Assembly (NCBI RefSeq): GCF_006345805.1
Contig: NC_043026.1
Span: 14,735,579-14,799,578, forward strand
From: Octopus sinensis
Lineage: Eukaryota
Length of the DNA stretch: 64,000 nt
Direction of reading: 5' to 3'
A model generated the notes under the pieces. It had not been told where the DNA came from. It worked only from the letters and a program-made list of their open reading frames with translations, and ran no database searches. A program made the position numbers and the translations under genes. Below are positions 10,508 to 64,000 of the stretch, piece by piece; position 1 is the stretch's first letter; every line of letters begins with the position of its first letter.

Positions 10508-10570
<63 letters not shown>

Positions 10571-10780
10571 GTATAAAAACATGAACAGGTACAATGAGAG
10601 AGAGAAGATAGACAGACAGACAGAGAGAGCATGTAGAGAAAATGAGAAAAGACGAAAAACAGAAGATGCCAAAAAGTTGAGTGGTGGGCATGGATGGAAG
10701 GGAGTTTAATGTTGGAGAGACGTGAGAAGGGGTGAGGGAGGGAGGGAGGGGTTGAAAGAGATATAAAGTGTAAAACTTAC

Positions 10781-13700
10781 CGAAAGATGGATAATCAATG
10801 CCAAAGAGTAGTCGAGAATGTTGGTGGTGATGATGATGCAGATGATGATGATGGTGGTGGTGTCGGTACGTGCCCTTGTTCCTTGACCTTCCGCCGGAGG
10901 TCGACTGCGATGATCTGGCACCAAACATATAGGAAGAGTAGTCATTCGAACCATTCCCACCATCACCACCAGCACCACCACTACCACCACCGCCGTCGTC
11001 GTCGTTGTTGTTGTTGTTGTTACTGTAGCTACTACTACCACCACTGTTGGTTCTACTCCCACCTCCGCTGCTGCCTCCGGTTCCTCCTCTACCACCACCA
11101 CCAGCACCACCACCACCACCACCGCTGCTGCTGCCGCCGCCACCACTACCAGCGCTGCCGCCGCCACCACCACCGCCACTACCAGCGCCGCCGTTGCCGT
11201 TGTCTCCGCCACCAGCGCCATCATCCAGCCTTCCTGATTTCCCTCCGCTCCGACTATTATTGCTGTAACTGCCACCACCACCACCGCCGCCACCACTACT
11301 ACAGGTACTCATGTTCGGGTGGCTATGTTTACCATGGACAACATTATCATTATTACTCTTGCAGTGAGTATTACCATTGTGATCATTATGATTATTATTA
11401 TTAGCATTGTTATTACGATTATTATTTCTATTATTATTATAATTATTATTATTATTATTATTATTAATATTATTGCTACTGTTGTTTGCGTAAGCGGGAT
11501 GCTGGTTAGGCAGCGCATCCGTGGAACAGGCGGTGGTGTTGGTGCACTTCTTGAAGTGATGCAGGTCGTTATTGATGTACCCCAGGGACTGCCTGTGCTG
11601 CCACCTACCCTGGGACCGCGACGGCATTCCGTTGTTTAGTATGTTCGGCGACGGAGTGCTCCGCCGCCTCATGCCGCCCTCACCACCACCACCACCACCA
11701 CCATCAGCCAACGGAGACTCTGGCAGCTGTTTCCGTTGGCGACGGTGGCTGCTCTGTCCATCTTCCGTGCATTTGGAGCCATCCAGGCTGCACTTGGGTG
11801 GATGCTGCTGTTGCTGGGGGAGGTGCCACGACCCAGCAGCAAAGGGTGGGGAAGCAGGAGAGGGACTAGTAAGGGGACTGTGGTGTGACGATGACGATGA
11901 TGCTGATGATGACGGCGCTGGCGTTGATACTGCAGCTGAGGAAGATGGTGATGAGAAGAAAGCAGGAGATAGTGGAGGAGGTGAAGGAGGAGGAGGAACG
12001 GCTGCTGTAGTGAAGTTCTTCTTCTTCTTCCTGCTGCTGCGAGAGGATTTGTTGCTTGGCTTACCCTGGCAACAACTGTCTGACCTCTCGTACAAAGGCG
12101 ACGCCCTATTCTCTCGATCCACATCGCCGCCGCCGCCAACACTGGTATCATAACTGTCACCGCATACTGTGGTTCTATCTTTTCTGGTGGTGGATGCTGT
12201 TGTTGTTGTTGTTGTTGTTGTTAAGCCCATTGCATTCTCATACGCGGGGACATTCGCAAAGGAAGCAGATTTTCTCCCACTGTCAATACTGCTGTGACCC
12301 CTGCTATCGACGGGGTTCGCAGAGAACATTGCAGTCGGATTTGGTTGCGAAGAAAGGGAAACACCTAAGCCCGATGTCGACAGGGGTACACTAAAACTGG
12401 ATGTTGAGAGGCACGCACCGATGCCAGGCACAGATGGGGGGCCCATACCAAAACCAGGCGCTGAGAGGGTTGCATGGAGGCCCGATGCAGAAAGGCTCGA
12501 CGTAGAGGGAGAGAGTGATGCTGAGCTGAAGACAGGTGTGGTTTTCTGTCTCTCTTTGGCCAGCTTTGCTACCTGTGAATAGGTGCGTCTCGACGAACAC
12601 ACCTCTTCTTTGTTGCTGCAGTTACTACCCTGCTCTGATGCCGGTGATGACAGCGACAGTGGGGGCAGAGGGGGTCTTGGTAAATTTGATGCTGGTGTTG
12701 GTGTTGCTGCTACTGCTACTGATGGTGGTGATGGTGCAGCACTATCAACAAGGAGCTCAGAGTAGACAAATTCATTGTTGTAAGTCCAAGAGTGGACACG
12801 AAGAGGTGGTGAAACCCCTGCAAAATCTGTTGACCTTCCATGTGGTTGACACTCTTCCTCCCGCATTCGTTGTTGTTGCTGCTGCTGTTCCCACAATTGC
12901 TGCTGTTGTTGTTGTTGATAATGCTGCTGTTGCACAGCATGGTCTTGTTGTTGTTGTTGCTGTTGTTGAAGAAACCGCAAATGCTGTTGTTGCTGCTGCT
13001 GTTGTTGTTGCTGTTGTTGTTGTAGTAACAGCTGGTGCAGTACGTACGCACGACTGGCTTCGGCAGACTTCCTCTCGCTGCCGATTGCACCCTTGGTGGA
13101 CGACGACATGCAGTAAAGCGGGAGAGCGTCCCCGCAGTGAGGGGGCAGCGGCACCGGGGCTGAAAGGGACGGCGGCGGCAGCGGTAAATGCGGCACTGAC
13201 AAAGGTAGCGTCGGAGAGGAAGACGCGGGCAGAGTCGGAGGGATCACGACGGAGACGCCTCCAAGCTGTTCCCCACCATGACGTGGCTTAGAGCCAGGGA
13301 CACTGCCAGTCATAGTGGTGGTGGTCATGGTATGGAGGGGGGGAAGTTGAGCAAAGGCTTGTTGCATCTCTGCAATAGAAATGAATTCCTCGTCCTTGAA
13401 ACCGTTCTGAAGGCAACAACTATCTCCAGCCTCGCTGCCAACAATGGCCCCACTACTAACGGGTTGCTCCAGCATGGACAAACTGCAACGAAGAGGACAA
13501 CCCAACCCAGGTTGATGGTTCGTCATTTGGGCTTTGGTTAAGGTTTCACTGGAGACCAAGTTGAGGACAGGGTTGGCGGTGAGGCCGCAGATAGTCAGCA
13601 GGGGCGCCGCAGATGAAGCTGCTATTGTTGTCATGGCGACAGTCGTCAAGGAAGCTTCAGCCACTGTTGACGTCAACAAGGCATTTGTTGTTGTTGCTGT

Positions 13701-14117
13701 TGTTGTCAACGAGGCACTAATCGCCCTCGTCATGACAGATGAAGATGAGTGCGAGGGGACGGGAGTGTTTGCATCCGGGGAGCCTGCATTGGTGGGGTAA
13801 CTGTGACAGCTGTATGTAGGTTGACCCAAGGGGAACAGAGACATAGTGCCACCAACACTTCTGAAACCAGCCCAGTTGATGTTGCTGTTGTTGCTGTTAT
13901 TGTTGTTGCTATTACTACTAGTACTGCTGCTACTGGTCAAACTCTCGCTCTTGTCCGTACTCAGATCCACACCACCGTCACCACCACCACCCCTGTCCAG
14001 GCAGTAGGTGAACTCCTCACGCAGGTGAGTATTCACTGTGTACTCTTTGCCCGTTGCGCAATGTCCTCCAACACCGAACCTGAAGCCAGCATCCCTGTTG
14101 TTCACTGTGTCGACCAT
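10781..14117 (-). CDS. DNAJC14: DNAJC14-like J-domain protein, first coding exon (3337 nt; low-complexity N-terminus)
   Basis: Open frame from ATG at 14117 in GCCACCATGG context; polypyrimidine/CAG acceptor opens the exon at 14193; ends TTC G|gtaagt (donor 10780-10775, phase 1) and splices in frame to the exons below. Orthology is inferred from the architecture (long N-terminus, TM region, ..LPATGEEAMQRLL..KDPYSILG..HPDK). Confidence 0.8.
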
Positions 14118-18980: not shown

Positions 18981-19698
18981 TTGTATATATGTATGTCTGC
19001 CTTTATATATGTGAGATAATAATTTCACTTTAACAGTTTCAGTATTAATAGTGAAACTATTTATCTGACATTACAATAGGAAGTTATTGACACGTAATAC
19101 TGAAATAGTAGAAGATAATAAGAGATTGTTCTGGCCTTGCATTAAGCAAAAAACTGAAAGTGTTTTTGGTCCATGACACTACATGGACCAAAGTACGTAA
19201 GGAACGTGTAAAATTTGAAGGAACACAGTTGTGTAGTTCTCGAGTTTTAGGGATTCACAGACACACAGACAGACACATATTCACATCTTTTTATATATAT
19301 GTATACTCTCTTTTACTTGTTTCAGTCATTTGACTGCGGCCATGCTGGAGCACCACCTTTAGTCGAGCAACTCGACCCCGGGACTTATTCTTTGTAAGCC
19401 CAGTACTTATTCTATCGGTCTCTTTTGCCGAACCGCTAAGTGACGGGGACGTAAACACACCAGCATCGGTTGTCAAGCAATGCTAGGGGGACAAACACAG
19501 ACACACAAACACACATACATATATACGACAGGCTTCTTTCAGTTTCCCTCTACCAAATCCACTCACAAGGCATTGGTCGGCCCGGGGCTATAGCAGAAGA
19601 CACTTGCCCAAGATGCCACGCAGTGGGACTGAACCCGGAACCATGTGGTTGGTTAGCAAGCTACTTACCACACAGCCACTCCTGCGCCTATATGTATA

Positions 19699-19737
<39 letters not shown>

Positions 19738-20396
19738 CTGTATTACATGGATGATAATATTTTCAACGACATTACAACAGTTCCCCAAAAGCTTCAATTC
19801 TGCCTCTCTAGATATATTTACTCGAATGCTGACATCTACCGTATTGGTTTGATGCGTCATTTTCCACCATTAATAAGACTCTAGGCATGTTTGATGACAC
19901 GGGTATACTATGAAACATAGATACAGACACACACACACTAACACACAATGCGATTATAAAAGACATTTTATATATATTATTTACAATACATTTTTCATAT
20001 ATATATATATATATATATATATGTAAGTTCAGCAAAAATTTAGATTCAAATGAATATGGTACTTAATTTAGATGCACCAGAATTTTGTATGGTGTTATCC
20101 ATAAAAATCCGTGGGGTGATTATAATCAAAATAAGCAACAAGAATGACTCCGGTAATTTGATACGAAACGATCGTACCAAATTACCAGAGTCATTCTTGT
20201 TGCTTATTTTGAGTATATATATATATATATATATATATATGGCGATATCGAAAGAATGCCACGCGCATATATATACCCACGCACACATATGAGGGAATAG
20301 GCATGTATGTGTATATGTGTGGGTGCATATATATATATATATAACGGAGTAAGAACATAAATGTGAAACAAGGTGGAAAAAAGAGTACTCAAATAC

Positions 20397-22560: not shown

Positions 22561-24124
22561 ATAATGATTGTGGCGGTGGAAAGGATTATGGGAGGAGAGG
22601 CAAGGGCGGAGTAGATGGCTAAGAGAAAGGATATGTTGTCAACTGGAAGGGGAAGGGTGAAGAGTGATCAGATGTTTAATGATTGAGTAACGTGGTAGGA
22701 GGGCTGGGAAGGGAGTGGGTGTTGTCAACGACATAGTAGGAGGAGAAGGGAAGAGTTAGAGGTGGAGTAAATGACTAATGACTGTGCTGAGTGATGATAG
22801 CGAGAGTGAAAATTATAGATGTCAATGTATATACATGGTTCCGGGTTCATTCCCATTGCGTTGCACCTTGGGCAAGTGTCTTCTGCTATAGCCCCGGGCT
22901 GACCAATGCCTTGTGAGTGGATTTGGTAGACGGAAACTGATAGAAGCCTGTCGTATGTATGTATATATATATATATATATGCGTGTGTGTGTTTGGGTGT
23001 CTGTGTTTGTCCCCCTAGCATTGCTTGACAACCGATGCTGGTGTGTTTACGTCCCCGTTACTTAGCGGTTCGACAAAAGAGACCGATAGAATAAGTACTG
23101 GGCTTACAAAGAATAAGTCCCGGGGTCGAGTTGCTCGACTAAAGGCGGTGCTCCAGCATGGCCCCAGTCAAATGACTGAAACAAGTAAAAGAGAGTATAC
23201 ATATATATAAAAAGATGTGAATATGTGTCTGTCTGTGTGTCTGTGAATCCCTAAAACTCGAGAACTACACAACTGTGTTCCTTCAAATTTTACACGTTCC
23301 TTACGTACTTTGGTCCATGTAGTGTCATGGACCAAAAACACTTTCAGTTTTTTGCTTAATGCAAGGCCAGAACAATCTCTTATTATCTTCTACTATTTCA
23401 GTATTACGTGTCAATAACTTCCTATTGTAATGTCAGATAAATAGTTTCACTATTAATACTGAAACTATTAAAGTGAAATTATTATCTGACATATATACAG
23501 GCAGACATACATATATACAATATATATATAATATGGCACATAAAAAGCACCAACCGTTCTTGACCGTTGCCAACCTACCCTGGCACCTAAAAAGCAGCAT
23601 CCGTATGTGGCCAATGCCAGTGCCACCTTGACTGGTTTCCATGCCAGTAGCACGTAAAAGGCACCAACCATTATTGACCGCTGCCAGCCTACCCTGGCAC
23701 CTAAAAAGCACCATCCATACGTGGCCGATGCCAGCGCCATCTTGACAGGTTTCCGTGCCGGTGACATGTAAAAAGCACCAACCGATCGTGACCATTGCCA
23801 GCCGACCCTGGCACATAAAAGGCACCATCCGTACGTGGCCGATGCCATTACCACCTTGACTGGTTTCCATGCTGGTGGCACGTAAAAAGCACCAACCGTT
23901 CGTGGCCGTTGCCAGCCTACCCTGGCACATAAAAAGCACCATCCGTACGTGGCCGGAGTGGTTGGTGTTAGGAAGGGCATCCAGCCGTAGAAACATTGCC
24001 AGATCAGACTGGGCCTGGTGCAGCCTTCGGGCTTCCCAGACCCTGGTCGAACAGTCCAACCCATGCTAGCATGGAAAACACGTTAAACGATGATGATATA
24101 TATATATATATATATTATGTAAGC

Positions 24125-39419: not shown

Positions 39420-39534
39420 GATTCAGATGAATATGGTACTTAAGTTAAAGGCACCAGAATTTGTATGGTATTATCCATATAAAACCAAATGGGGTGATTA
39501 TAATCAAAATAAGCAACAAGGATATCCAAGGTAG

Positions 39535-39614
39535 TGTAGTACAATTGTTTCATGCTACTTCATTTTATTAAACACTGTCATCAGTTCTAAAATGTCGAGC
39601 AATCTTCAGCCACA
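39535..39614 (-). ncRNA. Hammerhead ribozyme motif, related subfamily, U-U mismatch at the 10.1:11.1 pair
   Basis: TGTGG CTGAAGA TTGCT...AGCAT GAAA CAATTG TA CTACA on the minus strand. Confidence 0.55.
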
Positions 39615-39730
39615 TATAGAATTTTTTAATTAAATGGACAGTGCACGTTCTTATACTTATTTGAAATGAAGTAGCATGAAACAATTGTACTACACTGCCT
39701 TGGATATCCTTGTTGCTTATTTTGATTATA

Positions 39731-39918: not shown

Positions 39919-40006
39919 TTTGGCTGAAGAGCACTCGACATCTTAAATCTGCTGTAATAATTACAACTTTTAATAAAATGTTGTAGTGCAAAACTATTGT
40001 ACCAAA
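39919..40006 (+). pseudogene. Degenerate hammerhead ribozyme copy (G12 to A)
   Basis: TTTGG CTGAAGA GCAC...GTGC AAAA CTATTG TA CCAAA followed by the same tail as the 51.8-kb element. Confidence 0.55.
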
Positions 40007-41403
40007 TTACCGGAGTCATTCTTGTTGCTTATTTTTGATTATAATCACCCAACAAATTTTTTATGGATAACACCATACAAAATTCTGGTGCATCTAAATT
40101 AAGTACCATATTCATTTGAATCTAAATTGTTGCTATATATATATATATATATATATTATATTAAATTAGAGATAAAACCACTATTAGGCAAATCATACAA
40201 TGAAAAACTTAAGCCAATACATAAGATTAATTTATATTATTTTATATTTAAAATAATATAAATTAATTATCCTATGTATTGGCTTAAGTTTTTCATTGTT
40301 TGATTTGCCTAATAGTGGTTTTATCTCTAATTTAATATAATATAATATTTTACTATAAAATTGGATTCAATCCTAAATCTGATTTTGCCCTGTAAGTTTG
40401 GATTTATTCCCTAATATTTATGATATATATATATATATAATCTATATACTCATTATCTTTTATTATACTTTTAATAATTTTGATATATATTTAAAATAAT
40501 ATAAATTAATTAATTTTATGTATTGGCTTAAGTTTTTCATTGTATGATTTGCTTAATAGTGGTTTTATCTCTAATTTAATATAATATAATATTTTACTAT
40601 AAAATTGGATTCAATCCTAAATCTGATTTTTCCCTGTAAGTTTGGATTTATTCCCTAATATTTTATTTTATTTTATATATATATATATATATGTAATTTC
40701 TATTTCTATTTAGCAGAAGCAATAGAGCGATTCAAAATTCGAGAGTTTTGTGCATTAGCACTTACCAACTGATAACACATGAAACTTCCAGCCTCTGAGT
40801 CAATCTGTTGCTTCTGATAAATATCAATAAACATACACCATAGCTGTGTGGTTAGGGAGCTTGCTTTCTAGCTACATGGTTTCGGGTTCAGTCCCACAGC
40901 GTGGCACTTTGGGTAGGTGTCTTCCACTATAGCCCCAAGCAGACCGAAGCTTTGTGATTGAATTCGGTAGGCGGAAGTTACTGCCGTGTGTGTTTGTGTG
41001 TGTGTGTGTGTGTGTAGGTGCTCAGTGCCTCTCCGAAAGAGAGAGAGAAGGTATCTGTGTATATACACTGTATTTTCTGGCTTAAAAGATGACCTCTTGC
41101 ATTAGAGGCACCTCTACTTTACAAGCGCATTCTGGGGCAAAAAAAAGCTAATTTAGTAGGATTCAAAACACACCCATACATGTGGTATAGCATCCTTTAT
41201 ACGGCCGCATTTGATGCGTAGCATTGAAGAGTAATAAAGCGGATTTCGTGTATCAGTATATACGGTATACATACGCACACATGTTATTCAGCAATGCTCA
41301 TTGGCAAGGGCTATAAACGTAAGCAAGAAAATGCTGTAGTGTAAGAGCTTATCAATCAAATTCTTTGGCTTCCTTAGTAAAGCAGTGACAGCCACTTTAT
41401 TCT

Positions 41404-42140
41404 CACTTGTGAAGACCTGTTGAGGCAAATGAAAATCAAAATCGATCAACATCAATGGAAATTGCAGCTGTGATACCAGTGCTGGTGGTACGTAAGAGAA
41501 CTATCCAAACCTGGCTTATGCCAGCGCCACTCCAGCTGGCCTCGTGCCGGTGGCACATAAAAAGCACCATCCGATCGTGGCCATTGCCTGCCTCGCCTGG
41601 CATCCGTGCCGGTGGCACATAAAAAGCACCATCCAATCGTAGCCGTTTGCCAGCCTCGCCTGGCCTCCGTGCCGGTGGCACATAAAAAGCACCATCCGAT
41701 CGTGGCCATTGCCTGCCTCGCCTGGCCTCCGTGCCGGTGGCACATAAAAAGCACCATCCGATCGTGGCCATTGCCTGCCTCGCCTGGCCTCCGTGCCGGT
41801 GGCACATAAAAAGCACCATCCGATCGTGGCCATTGCCTGCCTCGCCTGGCCTCCGTGCCGGTGGCACATAAAAAGCACCATCCGATCGTGGCCATTGCCT
41901 GCCTCGCCTGGCCTCCGTGCCGGTGGCACATAAAAAGCACCATCCGATCGTAGCCGTTTGCCAGCCTCACCTGGCCCCCGTGCCGGTGGCACGTAAAAAA
42001 CACCCACTATACTCATGGAGTGGTTGGCATTAGGAAGGGCATCCAGCCGTAGAAACATTGCCAGATCAGACTGGGCCTGGTGCAGCCTTCTGGTTTCCCA
42101 GACCCCAATTGAACCGTCCAACCCATGCTAGCATGGAAAG
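41404..42140 (+). mobile_element. RTE LINE 3' UTR-derived repeat with ~62-bp internal tandem units
   Basis: Homologous to 42840-43393; ends gctaaacgatgatga. Related copies at about 1180, 5075, 18060, 23530, 26110, 59720 and 62815. Confidence 0.7.
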
Positions 42141-42399: not shown

Positions 42400-43759
42400 C
42401 CCTTTAGTGTTCAGATTATTCTGTCAAATGTGATGTTTGTTTATTTAAAATGGTTTGAATTAACCCTTTAGTGTTCGCATTACTCGACAGAGCGTTAGTA
42501 CCTTGAGAGAAATGTTGTACCTAAGAAGCATCAGTTGTTGTGTGCAAGAGAGACGATTGCGCTGGTATGGTCATGTGGCGAGAATGGATGAAGATAGGTG
42601 TGTGAGAAAGTGCCAATCCCTAGCAGTTGAGGGAACCCGTGGAAGAGGTAGACCCAGGAAAACCTGGGACGAAGTGGTGAAGCACAACCTTCGGACGTTA
42701 GGTCTCACCATGGAAATGACTAGAGACCGAGACCTATGGAAGTATGCTGTGCGTGAGAAGACCCGGCAAGACTAGTGAAGCCATAATCCGTGGCCCCTAC
42801 CTGGGACGTAGTCAGTCCACCTGTGCATACCTTCCTTCTTGTGACACTTGTGAAGACCTGTTGAGGCAAGTGAGAATCGAATCGAATCAAATCAAATCAA
42901 ATCGAACCAAATGAACATCAATGGAATTTGTATCCTTGTGGTACCAGTGCCGGTGGCACATAAGAAAACCATCCGAACGTGATCGTAGCCAGTACCGCAA
43001 CGACTGGCCTCCGTGCTGAGGGCACATAACAAACACCATCCGAGCGTGGCGGCCGTCCGCCAGCCCCGTCTGGCACCTGTGTCGGTGACACATAAGAAAA
43101 CACCATCCGAGCGTGGCCGTCAGCCAGCCCGTCTGGCACCTGTGTCGGTGGCACATAAAAAACACCATCCGAGCATGGCTGTCTGCCAGCCTCGTCTGGC
43201 ACCTGTGTCGGTGGCACATAAAATCACCCACTACACTCTCGGAGTGGTTGGCGTTAGGAAGGGCATCCAGCTGTAGAAACACTGCCAGATTGACTGGCCT
43301 GGTGCAGCCTTCGGGCTTGCCAGACCCCAGTTGAACCGTCCAACCCATGCTAGCATGGAAAGCGGACGTTAAACGATGATGATGATGATGATGATTACTC
43401 TGCCAAAATTAATCCTTTTTCATCCACATTGTTTTGAACTAATCATGCGTTATCTTGTAGCTTTGAGATTTTGATGAGGTAGCTGTTAATTTTTGAAACG
43501 ATATTGTAGGGTTGGTGTGAGAGACCAGATCTGGCCAGTTTGAACATAAAACAAGCAGAATACTTTTGGCCGGATATGGCCAGTTTAAATGCTAAAGGGT
43601 TAATCCTGCATTATCTTGTAGTTTAGAGATTTCAGTGATGTGATTTTTTAGTTTTAGAATGACATGGTAGGGCTGAGGTCAGAGGCGAGATCCGGTCAGT
43701 TTCAATATAAAACAGGTTAAATATTTTGGCCAGATATGGCCGGTTTGAATGATAAAGGG
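42400..43759 (+). mobile_element. Nested TTAA MITEs (outer 42400-43759, inner 42464-43599) hosting an RTE LINE
   Basis: Inner element flanked by TTAA at 42460-42463 and 43600-43603, interrupting a homologous outer copy. Confidence 0.7.
42486..43393 (+). mobile_element. 5'-truncated RTE-clade LINE (ORF2 C-terminus, 3' UTR, (GAT)n tail)
   Basis: RLRWYGHVARM...RGRGRPRKTW; 7-bp TSD ATTACTC at 42479-42485 and 43394-43400. Confidence 0.85.
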
Positions 43760-50512: not shown

Positions 50513-50656
50513 CATGGGCCCATAACCGGAATGGGCGCGAGCCCGGTGCACACTGGCTCGCTCCTTCTCGGCCGCAGTTCTCTGCACTGTCTGGAAATTA
50601 TTCAAAGCATCGCTGAACTCGGAACGCAGTCGTTCATTCTGCATCTTACGCTGACG
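50513..50656 (-). CDS. STX7: Syntaxin-7/12-like exon (RQRKMQNERLRSEFSDALNNFQTVQRTAAEKERASVHRARAHSGYGPM)
   Basis: cttttgcag| and |gtgagt; 144 nt, phase 0 to 0; Habc helix c. Confidence 0.92.
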
Positions 50657-51038
50657 CTGCAAAAGAAGGAACGGAACATTACAGAGAGATAAATAAATAA
50701 TCGCAAGTGGCAGTGAGGCGGGGGGGAGGTGTTGATGCATTTTCCCCCCCATCACCCAGGAAACAAATATAAAAAAAAAACAAACAACAAACCACCGCCG
50801 CAAGAATTGCAATAACAACTACACTCTTACTTTTTTACTTGTTTCAGTCATTTGACTGCGGCCATGCTGGAGCACCGCCTTTTTAGTTGAGTAACTCGAC
50901 TCCGGGACTTATTCTTTTGTAAGCCTAGTACTTATTCTATCGGTCTCTTTTGCTGAGCCGCTAAGTGACGGGGGACATAAACACACCAGCATCGGTTGTC
51001 AAGCAATGCTAGGGGGACAAACACAGTCACACAAACAT

Positions 51039-51071
<33 letters not shown>

Positions 51072-51776
51072 CGACGGGCTTCTTTCAGTTTCCGTCTACC
51101 AAATCCATTCACAAGGCTTTGGTCGGCTCGAGGCTATAGTAGAAGACACTTGCCCAAGGTGCCACGCAGTGGGACTGAACCCGGAACCATGTGGTTGGTA
51201 AACAAGCTACTTACCACACAGCCACTCCTGCGCCTATAATGATAACTCTTACTCTTTTACTTGTTTCAGTCATTTTGAGCACCACCTTAAAGCCTTTTTT
51301 TAGTCACAGAAACCAACCCCAGGATTTATGCTTTGTAAGCCCCAGAACTTATTGTATTGGTCTCTTTTGCCCAACTGCTTCGTTATAGGGACATAAACAC
51401 ACCAACATCAGTTACCAAGTAGGACAAATAGAGACACAAAGACACACACACACACATACATACATATATATATAGTGGGCTTCCTTCAGTTTTTGTCTAC
51501 CAAATTGATTCACAAGACTTTGATTGACCCATTCTTATAGTAGAAGACACTTGTCCAAAGTGCCATGCAGTGGGACTGAACCTAGACCCTTGGGGATGGT
51601 TCTTGCCACACATACATAGATATCTGTACCTATATACATATATGTATATGATGGGATTCTTTCAGTTTCTATAGTAAAGGACTCATGCTTGAGATTCCAC
51701 GCAATGGGACTGAACTTGAAACCTATCTGGTTTGGAAGCAAGTTTCTTACCACACACACAAATATCTATATCTATT

Positions 51777-51804
<28 letters not shown>

Positions 51805-51810
<6 letters not shown>

Positions 51811-51964
51811 CAAAATAAGCAACAAGAATGACTCCGGTAATTTGGTACGATCGTTTCGTACTACATCATTTTATTAAATGTTGTAAGTATTACAACAGTT
51901 TTAAAATGCTGAGCACTCATCAGCCAAATTACCGGAGTCATTCTTGTTGCTTATTTTGATTATA
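51805..51964 (-). ncRNA. Type I hammerhead ribozyme motif, intact core
   Basis: Minus strand reads: 41-bp perfect stem I, CTGATGA (51923-51917), stem II GTGCT/AGTAC, GAAA (51857-51854), ACGATCGT stem III, GTA cleavage triplet. Confidence 0.8.
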
Positions 51965-52070
51965 ATCACCCCACGGATTTTTATGGATAACACCATACAG
52001 AATTCTGGTGCATCTAAATTAAGTACCATATTCATTTGAATCTAAATTTTTGCTGAACTTATATATAAAA

Positions 52071-52361
52071 TAGAGATAAAACCACTATTAGGCAAATCAA
52101 ACAGTGAAAATCATAAACCAATACATAAAATTAATTAATAAAAAATATATAAAATATAAAATTTAAAATTTAAATTATTTAAATTTAAAGTTATATATAT
52201 AAGTATAAATTATTAATTTAAATAATTTTTAAATTTTAAATTTTAACTTTAAATTTAAATAATTTAAATTTTGAATTTTATTTTTTATTAATTAATTTTA
52301 TTTCTATGTATTGGTTTATGATTTTCACTGTTTGATTTGCCTAATAGTGGTTTTATCTCTA
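52071..52361. repeat. AT-rich fold-back of a dispersed family (also at 1-150, 40156-40340, 40500-40660)
   Basis: tagagataaaaccactattaggcaaatc... versus ...gatttgcctaatagtggttttatctcta. Confidence 0.8.
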
Positions 52362-52490: not shown

Positions 52491-52678
52491 GACAGGCTTC
52501 TTTCAGTTTCCATCTACAAAATTCACTCATAAGGTTTTGGTTAATCCAAGGCTATAGTAGAAGGTATTTGCCCAAGGTGCTACACAGTAGGACTGAACCC
52601 AGAACCATGTGGTTGGGAAGCAAGCTTCTTACCACACAGCCACACCTGCGCCCATACATAGAAGAAGAGTTTGGTTAC

Positions 52679-52778
52679 CTGGTCAGATGCAGAGGCTGGT
52701 TGCGGGAAGTGAGCCAGTTCTTTGAGGTAAGAAGTTGTTTCTTTTGCCAGTTGGTTGGTGTAATGTTGGATCTCATGC
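52679..52778 (-). CDS. STX7: Syntaxin-7/12-like exon (HEIQHYTNQLAKETTSYLKELAHFPQPASASDQ)
   Basis: tttcag| and |gtaacc; 100 nt, phase 2 to 0; YTNQLAKET motif typical of STX7/12 Habc helix b. Confidence 0.92.
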
Positions 52779-54918: not shown

Positions 54919-55443
54919 ATCTAGGGTATTAATCGACAGCACATATTTCATCTCTTGGCCCTAAGGCCATTGTTCACATGAGCATTCATCCTCCATTCGC
55001 ATCCCCCACACTATTTTCCACCAACCTCTCCTATTCTGTGCTTTCATTTCTCTCTTGCCCTCCACTTTGGCCGACATACATCACAGCTCCACCATACCTC
55101 TCATACCTGCAACCATTCTCCCTTTCTCTTTACTTGCTTCAGTCATTTGACTGCGGCCATGCTGGAGCACCGCCTTTAGTCGAGCAAATCGACCCCGGGA
55201 CTTATTCTTTGTAAGCCCAGTACTTATTCTATCGGTCTCTTTTCTTGTTTCAGTCATTTGACTGTGGCCATGCTGGAGCACCGCCTTTAGTCGAGCAAAT
55301 CGACCCCGGGACTTATTCTTTGTAAGCCCAGTACGTATTCTATCGGTCTCTTTTGCCGAACTGCTAAGTTACGGGGGACATAAACACACCAGCATCGGTT
55401 GTCAAGCAATGCTAGAGGGACAAACACAGACACACAAACATAT

Positions 55444-55476
<33 letters not shown>

Positions 55477-56739
55477 CATATATACGGCAGGCTTCTTTCA
55501 GTTTCCGTCTACCAAATCCACTCACAAGGCTTTGGTCGGCCCGAGGCTATAGTAGAAGACACTTGCCCAAGGTGCCACGCAGTGGGACTGAACCCGGGAC
55601 CATGTGGTTGGTAAGCAAGCTACTTACCATACAGCCACTCCTTTTCATTTACATAACATTGATACCCTTCTGCCATCGTTGTCCCTTCAGCTACCCTTAT
55701 ATATCTCTCACCTCCATCTCTTCCACTGTACATCATCAGACACTCCCTACTTTCTGATCAGTCGACCAATTGATGACACTGCTTCTCTCCGTTCCTCCTG
55801 ATCTGCCCCTTGTAACCACTCCATTCCCGAGTTACCTCCTCTACCTCATTCACCTCTCCCCCTCCATACCAATACTTCCCATCAACCACACCGCCACCTT
55901 TGTTCCTCACCCACTACATTCACCTCTTCGACAATCTCTAACCATGAGTTCCTCTCCTCTCACTCACCCATCCTTCCCCTTATCACTGTCTCTCTCTCCT
56001 CTCTTGTGCTCACCTTCTTGTATCTTGAGAGTTCACTCTGGCTTGTGTCTCCATCATCTCTACTCACTTTTCAGCTGCACCCACCTACCCTTATATAATT
56101 TGGGGTAACCACATATCTCCTCTCTTACAACACACCAATACTTTCCCCTCTATTATATTTAGCATCTTTTTTTTTTCCTCTTTCTTTCCATTTACGATCC
56201 CTTTTGATCGAAAACAAATACCCCTTTTTTTATCCCCAAAAAGAAAAGCTCTACCTTGTAATTTGTCCCGTCTGTGTGCAGCCCTGTGTGGCTAATAAAG
56301 AAACATACATTTAGCATCTCAGCACCTCTTGCAAAAATCCAGACGCCACACAGTCAAGAGGCTTTTTCTTTTTCTTGTCTTGCAAGATACTTGACAACCT
56401 CAGTGGTGCTGGTGCCACATAAAAAAAGCACTCCAGCCCACTCTGTAAAGAGGCTGACATTAGGAAGGACATTGTCCAGCTGTGGAAACCATGCCGAAAC
56501 AGACATTGGAGCTTGATGCAGTCCTGTCAAAGCATCCGATCCATGCCAGCCTAGAAAATGGGCAGTAAAAGATGATGAGATACACACAGAGTCTATTTCA
56601 GTTCCAGATGCACTGTACAACATCCCAGCGAATGGTCAGGTCTTGGCCAGGGGCAGTGGGGGGGTGGCAGTAGTGAAGTGGGGCGGGGGAAAAGAGGTGG
56701 TGGTCATGGATAATTGGGAGTTGAAAACATGGTACTTAC

Positions 56740-58302: not shown

Positions 58303-61300
58303 ATACAAATGAAAAAAAACAATTTAGATGGTTCATTCAGCTTTCAGATATCAGAATGTTGACTTATTTATTTATTTAACAAAAATGAGGACCTTAATAG
58401 CATACATATATACATTATAATTCAATACATATAAGAAAGAATACAAATACAAAAATCATAATATAAATTATTGAAATCATTAAAATCACTCCTTACAGCT
58501 GTTTCAGCTGTGGATAAAAGTAGTTTTTTTTCCAGTGCCTATAGTTGTCAATTGTATGAGGGTTGTAGGTATTTAAAAATAGGTTAATTATATATAACCA
58601 TAGGCCTCGTCAGAGATTATAAAGAACTCCCAAAAATATAATACATGCAACAGGATACACATATAATTTAATATATATAAAAAAATGCATATATATTTAT
58701 TATGAAACTATATATAGAAGTCTGCTTGACGACTGGTGCTCATGTCTGTGTGTCCTTAACATAGTGGTTTGGCAGCATAAACTGATAGAATAAGTATCAG
58801 GCTTAGAAAAGAAGTTCTGAGGGAGATTCACCAAACTAACGTTCTTCAAGGGGGTGCACCAGCATGGCCACAGTCGAACCATTGAAACAAGTGACTATAT
58901 ACTCTTTACTCTTTTACTTGTTTCAGTCATTTGACTGTGGCCATGCTGGAGCACCGCCTTTAGTCGAGCGAATCGACCCCGGGACCTATTCTTTGTAAGC
59001 CTAGTACTTATTCTGTCGGTCTCTTTTGCCGAACCACTAAGTTACGGGGACGTAAACACATCAGCCTCGGTTGTCAAGCGATGTTGGCGGGACAAACACA
59101 GGCACACAAACATATACACACACATGCATATATATATATATACATATATACGACAGGCTTCTTTCAGTTTCCCTCTACCAAATCCATTCACAAGGCTTTG
59201 GTTGGCCCGAGGCTATAGTAGAAGACACTTGCCCAAGGTGCCACGCAATGGGACTGAACCCGGAACCATGTGGTTTGTAAGCAAGCTACTTACCACACAG
59301 CCACCCCTACGCCTACATATACATAAACATAATATATACACACATATATGTATGAAGGAAAAATAGGGGCTAAATATATTCAGGTGAATCCGTTTTTTTG
59401 AAGAGGTATTAGCCCAGATTTAAAAGCACTTAAAAGCAGTTCATGGAAATGGAACCTGCTTCACTAAATGTCCAGGTATCAATACAACAATCCATATACC
59501 TTGTTATTAATTTCTGAGGCAGGTACAATTTGCAAATACAAAGTCGAGCACCAATTAATTTGGTGGATTAATTAGAAAAAGTGTGGCTGGAAAAGAAGTA
59601 CAGAATGACAATGCATTTTAGTGATTTCTTTAGCAGTGTGTATGCATTCACTATGATACATAGATGGCTGTTTTAATTAAATACTGCCGCAGCTCTGCAT
59701 ATAACATATTTAACATGGCCAATGCCAGTGCCGCCTAGGCTGGCTTCCGTGCCGGTGGCACGTAAAAAGCACCATCCGAATCGTGGCCGATGCCAGTGCC
59801 GCTTTGACTGGCTTCCGTGCCGGTGGCATGTAAAAAGCACCATCTGAATCGTGGCCGATGCCAGCGCCGCCTTGACTGGCTTCTGTGCCGGTGGCACATA
59901 AAATGCACCAATCCGATCGTGGCCGTTGCCAGCTTCGCCTGGCACGTAAAAACCAGCCACTACACTCACGGAGTGGTTGGCGTTAGGAAGGGCATCCAGC
60001 TGTAGAAACACTGCCAGATCAGACTGGAGCCTGGTGCAGCCTTCTGGCTTCCCAGACCCCAGTCGAACCATCCAACCCATGCTAGCATGGAGAACGGACG
60101 TTAAACGATGATGATGATGGGGTGGGGTGCCATTTACAACGTTTCCTATATCAGGGGTGATAAATTCTCTGGATCAACGTGAAATAAAGTGTCATCCTTA
60201 AGGACACAAAGCCCCACAGGGAATCGAGCTCAAAACCTAATGATCATGAAGCGAAGATCCTAACCACTCAGCCATGATTCTTTACTCAAAGCCCTGACAT
60301 AAAGGTTTACAAAAGCCAAAGTATAAATACTAGGGAACTTTTCCGTTTGAACGGCAGATTTCAACACAATTTCTAGGTAACTAAACACTTTTAAACTTCG
60401 TATACTGGTAGAATGTGTTTATAAAACATCATTTTTCTCTTGGTTTTATTGAGAAAATTCTATAGTTAGAAAGAAAATCCGAGCATTTCAGCAATTTTAA
60501 CCAATCGATTACCTCCATTCAACTAAAATCATTTGCTGCGTCTAAAACTGAGAAACATCCTGTAACTAACCCTAACCCTAATTTTTTTTTTCTTAATTGT
60601 TAAATTAATTTAATTGTTACGCGTGTAAAAAAAAATGAAAGCAATGGAAAATGATTTAACCCTTTTCTTACTATATTTCTGACAAAATACACCCCTCATG
60701 AGTTTCAATTAAATTCTAAAATAATCATGAATCTAGGCTTGTAACTTTTTTACTTATCAACATTTTAATGTGATATTTGGAACATAATTAAAGAAAGGGT
60801 TCTTAATCAAAAAAATGCCGAAAAAAATGTGGAAAAAAAATCTCCCAAAATCAGGGAATTAAAATTACATTCGATCGTTGTACAAAACTGTAGATAACTG
60901 TTTACGAAGCATAATCACGTGTTTTCACGAATGTACTAAAGAGATTTGCTCTGATATTCTCATTTAAATATGAATAGGTAAATTCGGGCAGTTTGGTCAC
61001 ATTAACCAAAATTTTTTCGGGCGGCTTGGGCGCGTTTGGTAACGAAAAGCGTTAAACAATTAACAAACAAAAAGATTTTTATAATTTATACACACGCTTC
61101 TGNNNNNNNNNNNNNNNNNNNNNNNNNNNNNNNNNNNNNNNNNNNNNNNNNNNNNNNNNNNNNNNNNNNNNNNNNNNNNNNNNNNNNNNNNNNNNNNNNN
61201 NNACCAGTTGCACACTAGGGTGGGTCAAAGTAACCAACCACCCCACCTCCCCAGATAACCAGATAACCGAAAGAGATGGTGTTGGATTTCCACTTCGGCA

Positions 61301-61398: not shown

Positions 61399-64000
61399 AT
61401 ACAAATGAAAAAAAACAATTTAGATGGTTCATTCAGCTTTCAGATATCAGAATGTTGACTTATTTATTTATTTAACAAAAATGAGGACCTTAATAGCATA
61501 CATATATACATTATAATTCAATACATATAAGATAAGAATACAAATTACAAAAATCATAATATAAATTATTGAAATCATTAAAATCACTCCTTACAGCTGT
61601 TTCAGCCTGTGGATAAAAGTAGTTTTTTTTTCCAGTGCCTATAGTTGTCAATTGTATTGAGGTTGTAGGTATTTAAAAATAGGTTACTTATATATAACCA
61701 TAGGCCTCGTCAGAGATTATAAAGAACTCCAAAAATATTAATACATGCAACAGGATACACATATAATTTAATATATATAAAAAATGCATATATATTTATT
61801 ATGAAACTATATGATAAGAAGTCTGCTTGACGACTGGTGCTCATGTCTGTGTGTCCTTAACATAGTGGTTTGGCAGCATAAACTGATAGAATAAGTATCA
61901 GGCTTAGAAAAGAAGTTCTGAGGGAGATTCACCAAACTAACGTTCTTCAAGGGGGTGCACCAGCATGGCCACAGTCGAACCATTGAAACAAGTGACTATA
62001 TACTCTTTACTCTTTTACTTGTTTACAGATTTGACTTGTGGCCATGCTGGAGCACCGCCTTTAGTCGAGCGAATCGACCCCGGGACCTATTCTTTGTAAG
62101 CCTAGTACTTATTCTGTCGGTCCTCTTTTGCCGAACCACTAAGTTACGGGGACGAAACACATCAGCCTCGGTTGTCAAGCGATGTTGGCGGGACAAACAG
62201 GCACACAAACATATACACACACATGCATATATATATATATACATTATACGAAAGGCTTCTTTCAGTTTCCCTCTACCAAATCCATCACAAAGGCTTTGGT
62301 TGGCCCGAGGCTATAGTAGAAGACACTTGCCAAGGTGCACGCAATGGGACTGAACCCGGAACCATGTGGTTTGTAAGCAAGCTACTTACCACACGCCACC
62401 CCTACGCCTACATATACATAAACATAATATATACACACATATATGTATGAAGGAAAAATAGGGGCTAAATATATTCAGGTGAATCCGTTTTTTTGAAGAG
62501 GTATTAGCCCAGATTTAAAAGCACTTAAAAGCAGTTCATGGAAATGGAACCTGCTTCACTAAATTGTCCAGGTATCAATACAACAATCCATATACCTTGT
62601 TATTAATTTCTTGAGGCAGGTACAATTTGCAAATACAAAGTCGAGCACCAATTAAATTTGGTGGATTAATTAGAAAGTGTGGCTGGAAAAGAAGTACAGA
62701 ATGACAATGCATTTTTAGTGATTTCTTTAGCAGTGTGTATGCATTCACTATGATACATAGATGGCTGTTTTAATTAAATACTGCCGCAGCTGCATATAAC
62801 ATATTTAACATGGCCAATGCCAGTGCCGCCTAGGCTGGCTTCCGTGCCGGTGGCACGTAAAAAGCACCATCCGAATCGTGGCCGATGCCAGTGCCGCTTT
62901 GACTGGCTTCCGTGCCGGTGGCATGTAAAAAGCACCATCTGAATCGTGGCCGATGCCAGCGCCGCCTTGACTGGCTTCTGTGCCGGTGGCACATAAAATG
63001 CACCAATCCGATCGTGGCCGTTGCCAGCTTCGCCTGGCACGTAAAAACCAGCCACTACACTCACGGAGTGGTTGGCGTTAGGAAGGGCATCCAGCTGTAG
63101 AAACACTGCCAGATCAGACTGGAGCCTGGTGCAGCCTTCTGGCTTCCCAGACCCCAGTCGAACCATCCAACCCATGCTAGCATGGAGAACGGACGTTAAA
63201 CGATGATGATGATGGGGTGGGGTGCCATTTACAACGTTTCCTATATCAGGGGTGATAAATTCTCTGGATCAACGTGAAATAAAGTGTCATCCTTAAGGAC
63301 ACAAAGCCCCACAGGGAATCGAGCTCAAAACCTAATGATCATGAAGCGAAGATCCTAACCACTCAGCCATGATTCTTTACTCAAAGCCCTGACATAAAGG
63401 TTTACAAAAGCCAAAGTATAAATACTAGGGAACTTTTCCGTTTGAACGGCAGATTTCAACACAATTTCTAGTAACTAAACACTTTTAAACTTATATACTG
63501 GAGAATGTGTTTAGAAAAACATCATTTTTCTCTTGGTTTTATTGAGAAAATTCTATAGTTTGTAAGATATTTCGTCTGAAAATCCGAGCATTTCAGCAAT
63601 TTTAACCAATCGATTACCTCCATTCAACTAAAATCATTTGCTGCGTCTAAAACTGAGAAACATCCTGTAACTAACCCTAACCATAATTTTTTTTTTTTCT
63701 TAATTGTTAATTAATTAATTGTTACGCGGTGTAAAAAAAAATGAAAGCAATGGAAAATGATTTAACCCTTTTGTTACTATATTTCTGACAAAATACACCC
63801 CTCATGAGTTTCAATTAAATTCTAAAATAATCATGAATCTAGGCTTGTTTCATTAAATAACTGTAACTTTTTTACTTATCAACATTTTAATGTGATATTT
63901 GGAACATAATTAAAGAAAGGGTTCTTAATCAAAAAAATGCCGAAAAAAATGTGGAAAAAAATCTCCCAAAATTCAGGGAATTAAAATTACATGTCGATCG
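58107..64000. repeat. ~2.8-kb direct duplication across the gap (58107-60877 versus 61203-64000)
   Basis: Colinear near-identity with small indels; copy 2 starts exactly at the gap edge. Confidence 0.9.
61103..61202. other. Assembly gap (100 N)
   Basis: Run of exactly 100 n. Confidence 0.99.

What the first reader, a model, noticed from the sequence alone, without database searches (positions are those of the whole stretch)
51805..51964. Intact type I hammerhead ribozyme with a perfect 41-bp stem I, in sense orientation in a syntaxin intron
Seen: the minus strand reads ...ggtaatttgg CTGATGA GTGCT [extended stem II with catttta/taaaatg and tgttgtaa/ttacaaca] AGTAC GAAA CGATCG TA^ ccaaattacc..., closed by a perfect 41-bp inverted repeat (51805-51845 / 51924-51964). 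Established: CUGANGA, G10.1-C11.1, GAAA, A15.1-U16.1 and an NUH (GUA) triplet define the hammerhead core. A very short stem III with a palindromic loop (ACGAUCGU) is typical of metazoan Penelope-like/retrozyme type I hammerheads, which can cleave as dimers. Inference: the syntaxin gene is also on the minus strand, so this motif is transcribed in the intron between exons 52778-52679 and 50656-50513. It could cut the pre-mRNA between 51846 and 51845, affecting splicing or RNA yield.
Basis: partly seen in the sequence, partly recalled or inferred. Interest (0 to 1): 0.82.

Follow-up and report, generated by a model that had tools for sequence, protein, structure and literature searches.

The report
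Transposon-borne hammerhead ribozyme in syntaxin intron
The hairpin holds a real, complete hammerhead ribozyme motif, but it is a young fragment of a repeated retroelement sitting in a cephalopod syntaxin intron, and its 41-bp "stem I" is an inverted duplication made at insertion, so this is an ordinary member of a known class.

Summary
There is a perfect 41-nt inverted repeat (51805-51845 / 51924-51964). On the minus strand it encloses CUGAUGA, a 59-nt helix II, GAAA, the palindrome ACGAUCGU and A17. The motif is in sense orientation in an intron of a syntaxin-12-like gene.

It is not a unique gene feature. Three more copies of the same element lie in the window, at about 20.0, 39.4-39.7 and 39.9-40.1 kb. 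All four abut (TA)n. All share a conserved 3' module of about 100 nt. Their 3' ends, 5' truncations and inverted partner arms vary.

Copies 3 and 4 show that the native ribozyme has a 5-bp helix I, with compensatory changes in helices I and II. The 41-bp stem exists only because an inverted partial copy, ending within a few bases of the cleavage site, was joined next to the core. This anatomy matches Penelope-like or retrozyme-type retroelements that carry hammerheads.

Predicted activity as a monomer is weak:
- The helix III hairpin adds no stability.
- A competing pairing is 4 kcal/mol better than the active fold.
- Helix I has no loop 1 for tertiary contacts.
- The -64.7 kcal/mol helix I would hold the cleavage products together.

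An effect on syntaxin pre-mRNA is untested and probably small. Verdict: new member of a known kind, modest interest.

The parts
51924..51964 (-). Helix I 5' strand of the hammerhead. Read on the + strand, it is the first 41 nt (segment B) of an inverted partial copy that begins at, or within about 6 nt of, the ribozyme cleavage site.
51917..51923 (-). Catalytic box C3-A9, CUGAUGA
51858..51916 (-). Extended helix II, 59 nt, 22 bp in four segments, starting at G10.1-C11.1. It is conserved with compensatory changes in copies 3 and 4.
51855..51857 (-). G12 A13 A14 of the core
51847..51854 (-). Helix III: ACGAUCGU. It has two base pairs (A15.1-U16.1, C15.2-G16.2) and a GAUC loop. It is an 8-nt palindrome; the self-duplex is -10.0 kcal/mol.
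51846..51846 (-). A17. The predicted scissile bond lies between 51846 and 51845.
51805..51845 (-). Helix I 3' strand. This is segment B of the ribozyme-bearing arm. It ends ...GATTATA directly on (TA)n, with no tail.
51965..52061 (+). Tail C. It continues the conserved 3' module (B-C) of the inverted arm and is present on this side only. It ends ...GAACTTA next to TA-rich sequence.
51762..51804 (.). (TA)n microsatellite abutting the element
20023..20217 (+). Copy 2: C'B' - ATACGAAACGATCGTA - B - (TA)n. It has the same architecture as copy 1 and is 98.6% identical in C'B'. Most of the core is missing. Its flanks are unique, so it is an independent insertion.
39919..40133 (+). Copy 3: 5-bp helix I, CUGAAGA, helix II, AAAA (G12A, so dead), CUAUUG, UA, then B-C, then (TA)n. 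It has no inverted arm and is antisense to the syntaxin gene.
39420..39730 (-). Copy 4. The main unit runs from about 55 nt upstream of the core through a hammerhead (CUGAAGA, U10.1-U11.1 mismatch, GAAA, palindrome ACAAUUGU, A17 at 39540) and B-C to (TA)n. A head-to-head inverted partial arm (39664-39730, + strand) starts inside helix II. The main unit is in sense in the last syntaxin intron.
52679..52778 (-). Syntaxin-12-like exon upstream of the host intron
50513..50656 (-). Syntaxin-12-like exon downstream of the host intron. Its 3' splice site is 1189 nt downstream of the cleavage site.

Best explanation
The 160-nt hairpin is a young, head-to-head double insertion of the 3'-terminal part of a hammerhead-bearing retroelement. 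The element is of the Penelope-like (PLE) or retrozyme kind, and it landed in a (TA)n microsatellite inside a syntaxin-12-like intron of a coleoid cephalopod.

One arm (minus strand) keeps the complete type I hammerhead plus 41 nt downstream of its cleavage site. The other arm (plus strand) is a copy of the same 3' module, B plus tail C. Its inner end lies at the cleavage site, give or take a few bases.

Joining the two arms through the ribozyme's own 5-6-nt helix I complementarity turned the native 5-bp helix I into a perfect 41-bp duplex.

Shown here:
- the motif itself
- the family of four copies
- the native 5-bp helix I, with compensatory changes
- the conserved 3' module
- variable ends that all abut (TA)n
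- the sense orientation in the intron

Inferred:
- The two arms are two cDNAs primed from both strands of the target, as reported for a PLE protein in vitro, and annealed at helix I.
- The element is a passenger with no host function.
- As a monomer in the pre-mRNA it cleaves slowly, if at all.
- Any cleaved halves stay clamped together by the -64.7 kcal/mol duplex.
For: Core and helices:
- All conserved positions are present, and Rfam RF00163 aligns end to end.
- The chance expectation is 0.01 per window.

Family:
- Four copies are found by BLAST and pattern search.
- A family covariance model finds three hammerhead copies in the window and none elsewhere.

Structure across copies:
- 92.9% of cells are paired.
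- Three pairs change on both sides: helix I U-A to G-C; helix II U-A to C-G; and G.U, A-U, G-C at the next pair. Slid controls give none.
- Helix III is palindromic in copy 1 (ACGAUCGU) and in copy 4 (ACAAUUGU).

The stem is secondary:
- Copies 3 and 4 share the upstream sequence ...CTATAT.T.TGG and a 5-bp helix I.
- In copies 1 and 2 that sequence is replaced by the reverse complement of B.

Retroelement anatomy:
- The roughly 100-nt B-C module is highly conserved.
- The 3' ends vary (GAATC, GTTGC, GAACTTA), and all are followed by (TA)n.
- Arms without a tail end at GATTATA plus (TA)n.
- The tail is on one side only in copies 1, 2 and 4.
- The inverted arms have different inner ends.
- Copy 2 has unrelated flanks.

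Literature match:
- PLE insertions are 5'-truncated. They often carry an adjacent inverted 5'-truncated copy and a tail at one end. They favour microsatellites, (TA)n included, and carry hammerheads in their pseudo-LTRs (PMC8557442).
- A PLE protein cleaves and extends both target strands, uses two reverse-transcription start sites (the tail), and has its hammerhead about 90 nt upstream of them (PMC11167929).
- PLE and retrozyme hammerheads have a short palindromic helix III (PMC4209133, PMC7229834).

Lineage-specific: the orthologous intron in a relative lacks the element.

Energetics:
- The active monomer fold is 4 kcal/mol above the minimum-energy fold.
- The helix III hairpin adds +0.3 kcal/mol.
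- Helix I is -64.7 kcal/mol.
Against: - No reverse transcriptase or GIY-YIG reading frame is linked to any copy, so the PLE assignment rests on anatomy and on the type of hammerhead.
- There are only four copies, all from one 64-kb window. No copy was found outside it.
- The tail here is about 75-97 nt (75 in copy 4, 90 in copy 3, 97 in copy 1). Tails described for PLEs are 30-40 nt.
- The PLE studied in vitro started reverse transcription at a site not homologous to the target. Here the tail-less arms end in TATA next to (TA)n.
- Copies 1 and 2 share the same architecture. The hairpin could therefore have been copied as a unit from a master element rather than re-formed at each insertion.
- No cleavage or expression data exist.
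Confidence: 0.65

Rival explanations
1. It is a host-adopted intronic ribozyme. The hammerhead cuts the syntaxin pre-mRNA during transcription and so tunes splicing or mRNA yield. The precedents are the CPEB3 ribozyme and the amniote intronic hammerheads.
For: - The core is intact and in sense orientation, 1189 nt upstream of the next 3' splice site.
- A second, weaker sense-strand hammerhead (copy 4) lies in the last intron of the same gene.
- The CPEB3 intronic ribozyme does modulate expression of its host gene (PMC10919898).
Against: - It is one of four copies of a mobile family.
- The perfect arms indicate a recent insertion.
- It is absent from the orthologous intron of a relative.
- The monomeric helix III is unstable and a competing fold is favoured.
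- A continuous 41-bp helix I leaves no loop 1 for the tertiary contact that fast natural hammerheads need.
- Cleaved halves would stay paired (-64.7 kcal/mol).
- With published rates of 0.004-0.1 per min for comparable motifs (PMC7229834), under 6% would be cut before the acceptor site is transcribed.
- About 43% of Xenopus retrozyme copies lie in introns, so an intronic position is not special (preprint 10.64898/2026.07.22.740005).
Confidence: 0.08
2. It is a miniature inverted-repeat DNA transposon (MITE or foldback element) with 41-bp terminal inverted repeats and a TA target duplication. It happens to carry a hammerhead in its loop.
For: - The inverted arms are perfect and end in TATA within (TA)n.
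- Copies 1 and 2 have the same arm structure at unrelated sites.
- A genuine MITE with ~60-70-bp terminal repeats lies right next to it, so such elements are active in this genome.
Against: - The termini are not symmetrical. Tail C is always contiguous with one B arm and missing from the other in copies 1, 2 and 4.
- Copy 3 has the core and B-C with no inverted arm.
- The inverted arm of copy 4 starts inside helix II, not at helix I.
- The 3' ends differ between copies.
- TA target duplications cannot be scored inside (TA)n.
Confidence: 0.12
3. The main consequence is the double-stranded RNA, not the ribozyme. The 41-bp perfect intronic duplex would be a substrate for A-to-I editing, which is very active in coleoid cephalopods, or for small-RNA production.
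For: - The duplex is perfect, 41 bp, -64.7 kcal/mol, and transcribed in a pre-mRNA.
- Generic long-hairpin microRNA models in Rfam score on both strands.
- That long duplexes are edited and diced is established knowledge, not tested here.
Against: - The Rfam microRNA hits are far below their gathering scores and reflect only hairpin shape.
- There are no expression, editing or small-RNA data.
- This would be a by-product of any inverted-repeat insertion, not a function.
Confidence: 0.12
4. It is a chance match. An AT-rich hairpin loop happens to contain CUGAUGA and GAAA at the right places.
For: - The Rfam score (27.2 bits) is below the gathering score of 34.
- Scaling the E-value to one family and a genome of a few gigabases would predict roughly 0.1-0.2 such hits by chance.
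Against: - Two more family copies keep the same three helices, with compensatory changes and a consensus functional core.
- The descriptor control gives 0.01 hits per window.
Confidence: 0.02

Closest known systems
Hammerheads of Penelope-like elements (pseudo-LTR hammerheads; Cervera and de la Pena 2014, PMC4209133; Craig et al. 2021, PMC8557442; Frangieh et al. 2024, PMC11167929)
   Same: - Type I topology
- Native helix I of 4-5 bp
- Long helix II
- G10.1-C11.1
- Short palindromic helix III, suited to dimeric action
- The hammerhead lies a short distance upstream of the element's 3' end
- Insertions are 5'-truncated, with an adjacent inverted 5'-truncated copy, a tail at one end only and a microsatellite target
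   Different: - No reverse transcriptase/GIY-YIG frame is linked here.
- There is no unpaired base between A9 and 10.1.
- Helix II is much longer: 59 nt against 6-8 bp.
- The tail is about 75-97 nt against 30-40.
- The inverted partner abuts the core, giving a 41-bp perfect helix I, which I did not find described in the papers I read.
Metazoan non-LTR retrozymes (Cervera and de la Pena 2020, PMC7229834; preprint 10.64898/2026.07.22.740005)
   Same: - Non-coding, AT-rich elements of a few hundred bases with a type I hammerhead
- Helix III of two base pairs plus a tetraloop, as in invertebrate motifs
- A U.U mismatch at the base of helix II in copy 4, like axolotl HHR_Amex2
- Solo copies are common, many of them in introns
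- Thought to derive from PLE pseudo-LTRs
   Different: - There is no tandem array, so it cannot release a circular RNA by double cleavage.
- The 3' ends are fixed and carry a conserved module, rather than being permuted monomers.
Conserved intronic ribozymes: amniote HH9/HH10 hammerheads (cited in PMC7229834, ref. 22) and the CPEB3 HDV-like ribozyme (PMC10919898)
   Same: A self-cleaving motif in sense orientation inside an intron of a protein-coding gene.
   Different: - Those are single-copy and conserved at orthologous sites over long evolutionary spans. CPEB3 has been shown to affect its host gene.
- This one is a young, multi-copy transposon fragment and is absent from a relative's orthologous intron.
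MITE / foldback DNA transposons
   Same: A short non-coding element with long, perfect inverted arms, flanked by TA.
   Different: Asymmetric ends, variable breakpoints and a conserved 3' module point to reverse transcription rather than cut-and-paste.

Membership tests
Hammerhead ribozyme, type I (Rfam RF00163) | Conserved core: C3 U4 G5 A6 N7 G8 A9, G12 A13 A14, A15.1-U16.1, H17 (not G), G10.1-C11.1 | tested here: met
   CUGAUGA, G..C, GAAA, A-U and A17 are read directly and aligned by Infernal to all 45 model positions.
Hammerhead ribozyme, type I (Rfam RF00163) | Three helices around the core, with helix I open-ended, supported by covariation | tested here: met
   Over three copies 92.9% of cells are paired and 3 pairs change on both sides. 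Slid controls give 0. The minimum-energy fold of copy 3 is exactly the hammerhead secondary structure. With only three sequences the shuffle control is not significant.
Hammerhead ribozyme, type I (Rfam RF00163) | Score at or above Rfam's gathering threshold (34 bits) | tested here: not met
   27.2 bits, and nothing at the gathering threshold. Nearly all of helix II (55 nt) aligns as an insertion relative to the model, which probably accounts for the shortfall. This is a curation threshold, not a biochemical criterion.
Hammerhead ribozyme, type I (Rfam RF00163) | Loop 1 / loop 2 tertiary contact, needed for fast cleavage at physiological Mg2+ | tested here: inconclusive
   Helix I is a continuous 41-bp duplex with no bulge or loop. 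Helix II has internal loops after 5 and 7 bp. No contact can be inferred from the sequence.
Hammerhead ribozyme, type I (Rfam RF00163) | Site-specific self-cleavage after H17 | not testable with these tools
   This needs in vitro transcription and a cleavage assay.
Penelope-like elements (PLE) | A single reading frame with a telomerase-like reverse transcriptase and a GIY-YIG endonuclease | not tested
   All four copies are short 5'-truncated fragments. No long retroelement-like frame was evident next to them in the list of ORFs of 110 aa or more, but no domain search was run. A test needs full-length elements from the whole genome.
Penelope-like elements (PLE) | A hammerhead with a small palindromic helix III in the terminal repeat near the 3' end | tested here: met
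   ACGAUCGU in copy 1 and ACAAUUGU in copy 4. The cleavage site lies 41 nt from the tail-less 3' end and about 120-140 nt from the tailed 3' end.
Penelope-like elements (PLE) | Insertion anatomy: 5' truncation, an adjacent inverted 5'-truncated copy, an optional tail at one end only | tested here: met
   Copies 1, 2 and 4 are head-to-head pairs with tail C on one side. Copy 3 is a plain 5'-truncated copy. The tail is longer than the 30-40 nt described.
Penelope-like elements (PLE) | Preference for microsatellite targets | tested here: met
   Every scorable outer end (both ends of copies 1, 2 and 4, and the 3' end of copy 3) abuts (TA)n or TA-rich sequence.
Non-LTR retrozyme | Tandem repeats (at least 2 units of about 150-450 bp), each with a type I hammerhead | tested here: not met
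   Tandem Repeats Finder shows only (TA)n and AT-rich arrays. The family model finds one hammerhead per locus, and the two neighbouring ones are on opposite strands.
MITE (DNA transposon derivative) | Identical terminal inverted repeats at both ends of every copy, plus a target-site duplication | tested here: not met
   The outer ends are asymmetric (tail C on one side), and copy 3 has no inverted arm. TA duplications cannot be scored within (TA)n.

The most novel reading that the evidence does not exclude
The inner end of the inverted arm may be a DNA fossil of ribozyme cleavage in vivo.

- In copy 1 the arm ends within the 5-6 nt of helix I next to the scissile bond.
- In copy 2, an independent insertion that lacks the helix I 5' strand, it ends 0-1 nt from the scissile bond.

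If confirmed genome-wide, this would show two things:
- One of the two cDNAs made at insertion ran off a template RNA that the hammerhead had already cut.
- The two cDNAs were then joined through the ribozyme's own helix I complementarity.

That would link hammerhead cleavage mechanistically to the unexplained inverted-repeat architecture of Penelope-like insertions. It would also give the in vivo evidence of cleavage that is still missing for these elements: PMC11167929 found no RNA-seq reads ending at the cleavage site.
Probability: 0.2. Interest if true: 0.6.

Novelty: new member of a known kind. Interest (0 to 1): 0.3.

Why it matters
Hammerhead motifs carried by Penelope-like elements and retrozymes number in the thousands in many animal genomes, and many sit in introns. 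One more copy does not change the picture.

Three points have modest value:
- It documents such a family in a coleoid cephalopod gene, with an unusually long helix II that is conserved with compensatory changes across copies.
- It shows how an insertion-made inverted duplication can mimic a "perfect stem I". This is a caution for motif-based ribozyme annotation.
- The inverted arm ends at the cleavage site. That gives a simple, genome-wide testable prediction about whether these ribozymes cut their own template RNA in vivo and how inverted PLE insertions are formed.

Tried and rejected
- Rfam at gathering thresholds found nothing in the whole window. The hammerhead appears only in the permissive local search. 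The microRNA-family hits there are generic long-hairpin matches far below threshold, and I rejected them.
- External copies: two exact-pattern scans of metagenome contigs, one with the arm and one with the conserved end of B, found nothing.
- A protein search with the reading frame that runs through C'B' and into the core was meant to catch ORFs called on other copies in public assemblies. It found nothing.
- The syntaxin peptide search gave only relatives. The best were a 95%-identical exon on ENA contig ERZ21867824:ctg120220l and 93%-identical exons in Logan runs. One of those runs, ERR12945500, is cited as Acanthosepion esculentum reads. I therefore infer a coleoid cephalopod, but the species was not identified.
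- The relative's locus (L001) shares only exons with the window and has no hammerhead.
- A family-specific covariance model found no further copies in the window or in the fetched loci.
- Snap-back (self-primed) second-strand synthesis can explain the copy 4 arrangement. It cannot explain copy 1, where the tail is on the arm without the core. I rejected it as the general mechanism by reasoning, not by a test.
- Segmental duplication of copy 1 into copy 2 is rejected because their flanks are unrelated.
- An apparent similarity between the far-upstream regions of copies 3 and 4 did not hold up in a local alignment.

Full report
**Observation.** The sequence is as described. The arms 51805-51845 and 51924-51964 are 41 nt long and 100% complementary, with 78 nt between them. 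On the minus strand those 78 nt read as follows:
- CUGAUGA: 51923-51917
- A 59-nt helix II that starts at G10.1-C11.1: 51916-51858
- GAA: 51857-51855
- ACGAUCGU: 51854-51847
- A17: 51846

Rfam's type I hammerhead model aligns over all 45 positions at 27.2 bits, with E = 1.1e-4 for the 381-nt local search. This is below the gathering score of 34, so the default whole-window scan was empty. Nearly all of helix II (55 nt) aligns as an insertion relative to the model, which probably explains the shortfall. A relaxed descriptor of my own finds only this site in the window, against 0.01 hits per window in Markov shuffles. The hairpin folds at -83.2 kcal/mol, z = -16.6.

**It is a repeat family, not a one-off.** Pattern and BLAST searches found three more copies in the window. 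Aligned in ribozyme sense, the four copies are:
- Copy 1 (the finding): C'B' - core - B - (TA)n. B is the 41 nt after the cleavage site, C is a tail that follows B, and primes mark reverse complements.
- Copy 2 (20023-20217): C'B' - ATACGAAACGATCGTA - B - (TA)n. It is 98.6% identical to copy 1 in C'B'. Its flanks are unrelated, so it is an independent insertion.
- Copy 3 (39919-40133, + strand): native upstream sequence - core - B - C - (TA)n, with no inverted arm.
- Copy 4 (39420-39730, minus strand): native upstream sequence - core - B - C - (TA)n. It also has a head-to-head inverted arm (39664-39730) that starts inside helix II and ends at the end of B on (TA)n.

A covariance model built from the three cores finds no other copy in the window or in the fetched loci.

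**The ribozyme is real at family level.** The three cores are:
- Copy 1: CUGAUGA ... GAAA
- Copy 3: CUGAAGA ... AAAA (G12A, so dead)
- Copy 4: CUGAAGA ... GAAA, with a U10.1-U11.1 mismatch. A mismatch of this kind is described for an axolotl retrozyme hammerhead that keeps some activity (PMC7229834).

Over the three copies 92.9% of cells are paired. Three pairs change on both sides: helix I U-A to G-C, helix II U-A to C-G, and G.U / A-U / G-C at the next pair. Versions of the structure slid by 1-3 columns show none. With only three sequences the shuffle control is not significant, so this is supportive evidence rather than proof. Helix III is an 8-nt palindrome in copy 1 (ACGAUCGU) and, through two coordinated changes, in copy 4 (ACAAUUGU). 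It is not palindromic in the dead copy 3.

**What the 41-bp "stem I" is.** Copies 3 and 4 share the upstream sequence ...CTATAT.T.TGG. Their helix I is only 5 bp: UUUGG/CCAAA and UGUGG/CUACA, at about -2.7 kcal/mol. In copies 1 and 2 that upstream sequence is replaced by the reverse complement of B and C. The long stem is therefore an inverted duplication. Its junction lies inside the native helix I, where the two sequences cannot be told apart.

The family has these properties:
- The 3' module B-C (about 100 nt) is highly conserved among all four copies, while the first 20 nt of B vary.
- The outer ends vary (GAATC, GTTGC, GAACTTA), and every one is followed by (TA)n.
- Arms without a tail end at GATTATA plus (TA)n.
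- The tail is on one side only.
- The inner ends of the inverted arms differ between copies 1/2 and copy 4.

These are properties of reverse-transcribed insertions, not of a cut-and-paste element with fixed terminal repeats. They match published descriptions of Penelope-like elements (PLEs):
- 5' truncation, an adjacent inverted 5'-truncated copy, an optional tail at one end, a microsatellite target bias, and hammerheads in the terminal repeat (PMC8557442).
- A PLE protein that nicks and extends both target strands, starts reverse transcription at two nearby internal sites (the origin of the tail), and has its hammerhead about 90 nt upstream of them (PMC11167929).

My inferred model for copy 1 has three steps:
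- Two cDNAs are primed from the two target strands.
- One starts at the end of C and stops at the cleavage site. The other starts at the end of B and runs through the core.
- Their 3' ends (ATTTGG and CCAAAT) anneal because they are the two strands of helix I.

Alternatively the hairpin, once formed, was copied as a unit, since copies 1 and 2 share it. Two copies cannot decide between these.

**Gene context.** The syntaxin-12-like gene is on the minus strand. I located these exons:
- 53886-53789
- 52778-52679
- 50656-50513
- about 46103-46071
- 42321-42232
- 38593-38495, the transmembrane exon, which ends in a stop codon

Copy 1 is therefore in sense in the intron 52678-50657. Copies 3 (antisense) and 4 (sense) lie in the last intron. 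Copy 2 is outside the gene.

The closest peptides come from cuttlefish read sets and an unnamed ENA assembly, so the source is a coleoid cephalopod of undetermined species. In the ENA relative the orthologous intron is about 366 bp and has no hammerhead.

**Likely behaviour of the RNA.**
- As a monomer the two-pair helix III adds no stability (+0.3 kcal/mol).
- A competing pairing of U4-U7 with the loop of helix III makes the minimum-energy fold 4 kcal/mol better than the active fold.
- Helix I has no bulge or loop to contact helix II.
- The predicted dimer is a classic double hammerhead, at -173.2 against 2 x -83.2 kcal/mol. It requires the two 41-bp hairpins to swap arms, which I judge kinetically unlikely. 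This is inference.
- Published rates for comparable motifs run from 0.8 and 0.1 per min (coral, mussel) down to 6-22% per hour for monomeric axolotl motifs (PMC7229834).
- The 3' splice site is 1189 nt downstream. Assuming about 2-3 kb/min for RNA polymerase II (my own knowledge), under 6% would be cut before the acceptor exists unless the motif is of the fastest kind.
- If cut, the two halves remain joined by a -64.7 kcal/mol duplex. That favours re-ligation and would let splicing proceed.

An effect on syntaxin expression is therefore possible but probably small. The duplex itself is a plausible substrate for RNA editing or small-RNA production. That is untested.

**Comparison and verdict.** At sequence level this is a type I hammerhead of the PLE/retrozyme kind. 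It is not a retrozyme array, because there are no tandem units. It is not a canonical MITE. PLE membership is supported by anatomy only, because no reverse transcriptase frame is linked. Intronic copies of such elements are common: about 43% of Xenopus retrozyme copies lie in introns (preprint 10.64898/2026.07.22.740005). Hammerhead_1 hits have also been reported in a cephalopod genome (235 in the giant squid, PMC6962438). I rate it a new member of a known kind, with interest 0.3. The one lead worth following is that the inverted arm ends at the cleavage site in two independent insertions.

Noticed in passing
window 39527-39618 (minus strand); A17 at 39540: A second hammerhead-like motif lies in sense orientation in the same syntaxin gene, in its last intron. 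It reads CUGAAGA, GAAA, palindromic helix III ACAAUUGU and a 5-bp helix I, with a U10.1-U11.1 mismatch at the base of helix II. It is part of copy 4 of the family.
   Followed up: partly
window 52071-52361; also 40165-40330, 40480-40580 (inside a 244-bp tandem duplication at 40243-40692), 1-60 and 116-169: A separate palindromic MITE-like element with terminal inverted repeats of ~60-70 bp (TAGAGATAAAACCACTATTAGGCAAATCA...) and an AT-rich centre. It sits in TA-rich sequence right next to the hammerhead element at both copy 1 and copy 3. I cannot tell whether the adjacency is a shared target preference or a composite element.
   Followed up: partly
window 51310-51600, 50899-51199, 55297-55612, 19359-19690, 52495-52660 and about 20 other places: A SINE-like repeat of about 300 bp is very abundant. 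It ends ...CACACAGCCAC.CCTGCGCC.AT and is usually followed by (TA)n or (CA)n. These tails seem to supply the microsatellites into which the hammerhead element inserted, for example just upstream of copy 4.
   Followed up: no
window 10401-14117 (minus strand): An uninterrupted 1238-aa reading frame, rich in poly-Q, poly-N, poly-G and poly-S runs. It could be a large single coding exon of a low-complexity nuclear protein. No search was run on it.
   Followed up: no
window 41436-42121, 42887-43348, 23433-24064, 59673-60080, 62774-63175: Repeated frames of the type MGWTVQLGSGKPEGCTRP...FYVPPARRPGEAGNGHDRMVLFMCHRHG recur on the minus strand. Inside them are tandem units of about 100 nt. This looks like another dispersed repeat with an internal satellite. 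Two of the arrays lie in syntaxin introns.
   Followed up: no
window 61103-61202: A run of 100 N, which is an assembly gap.
   Followed up: no
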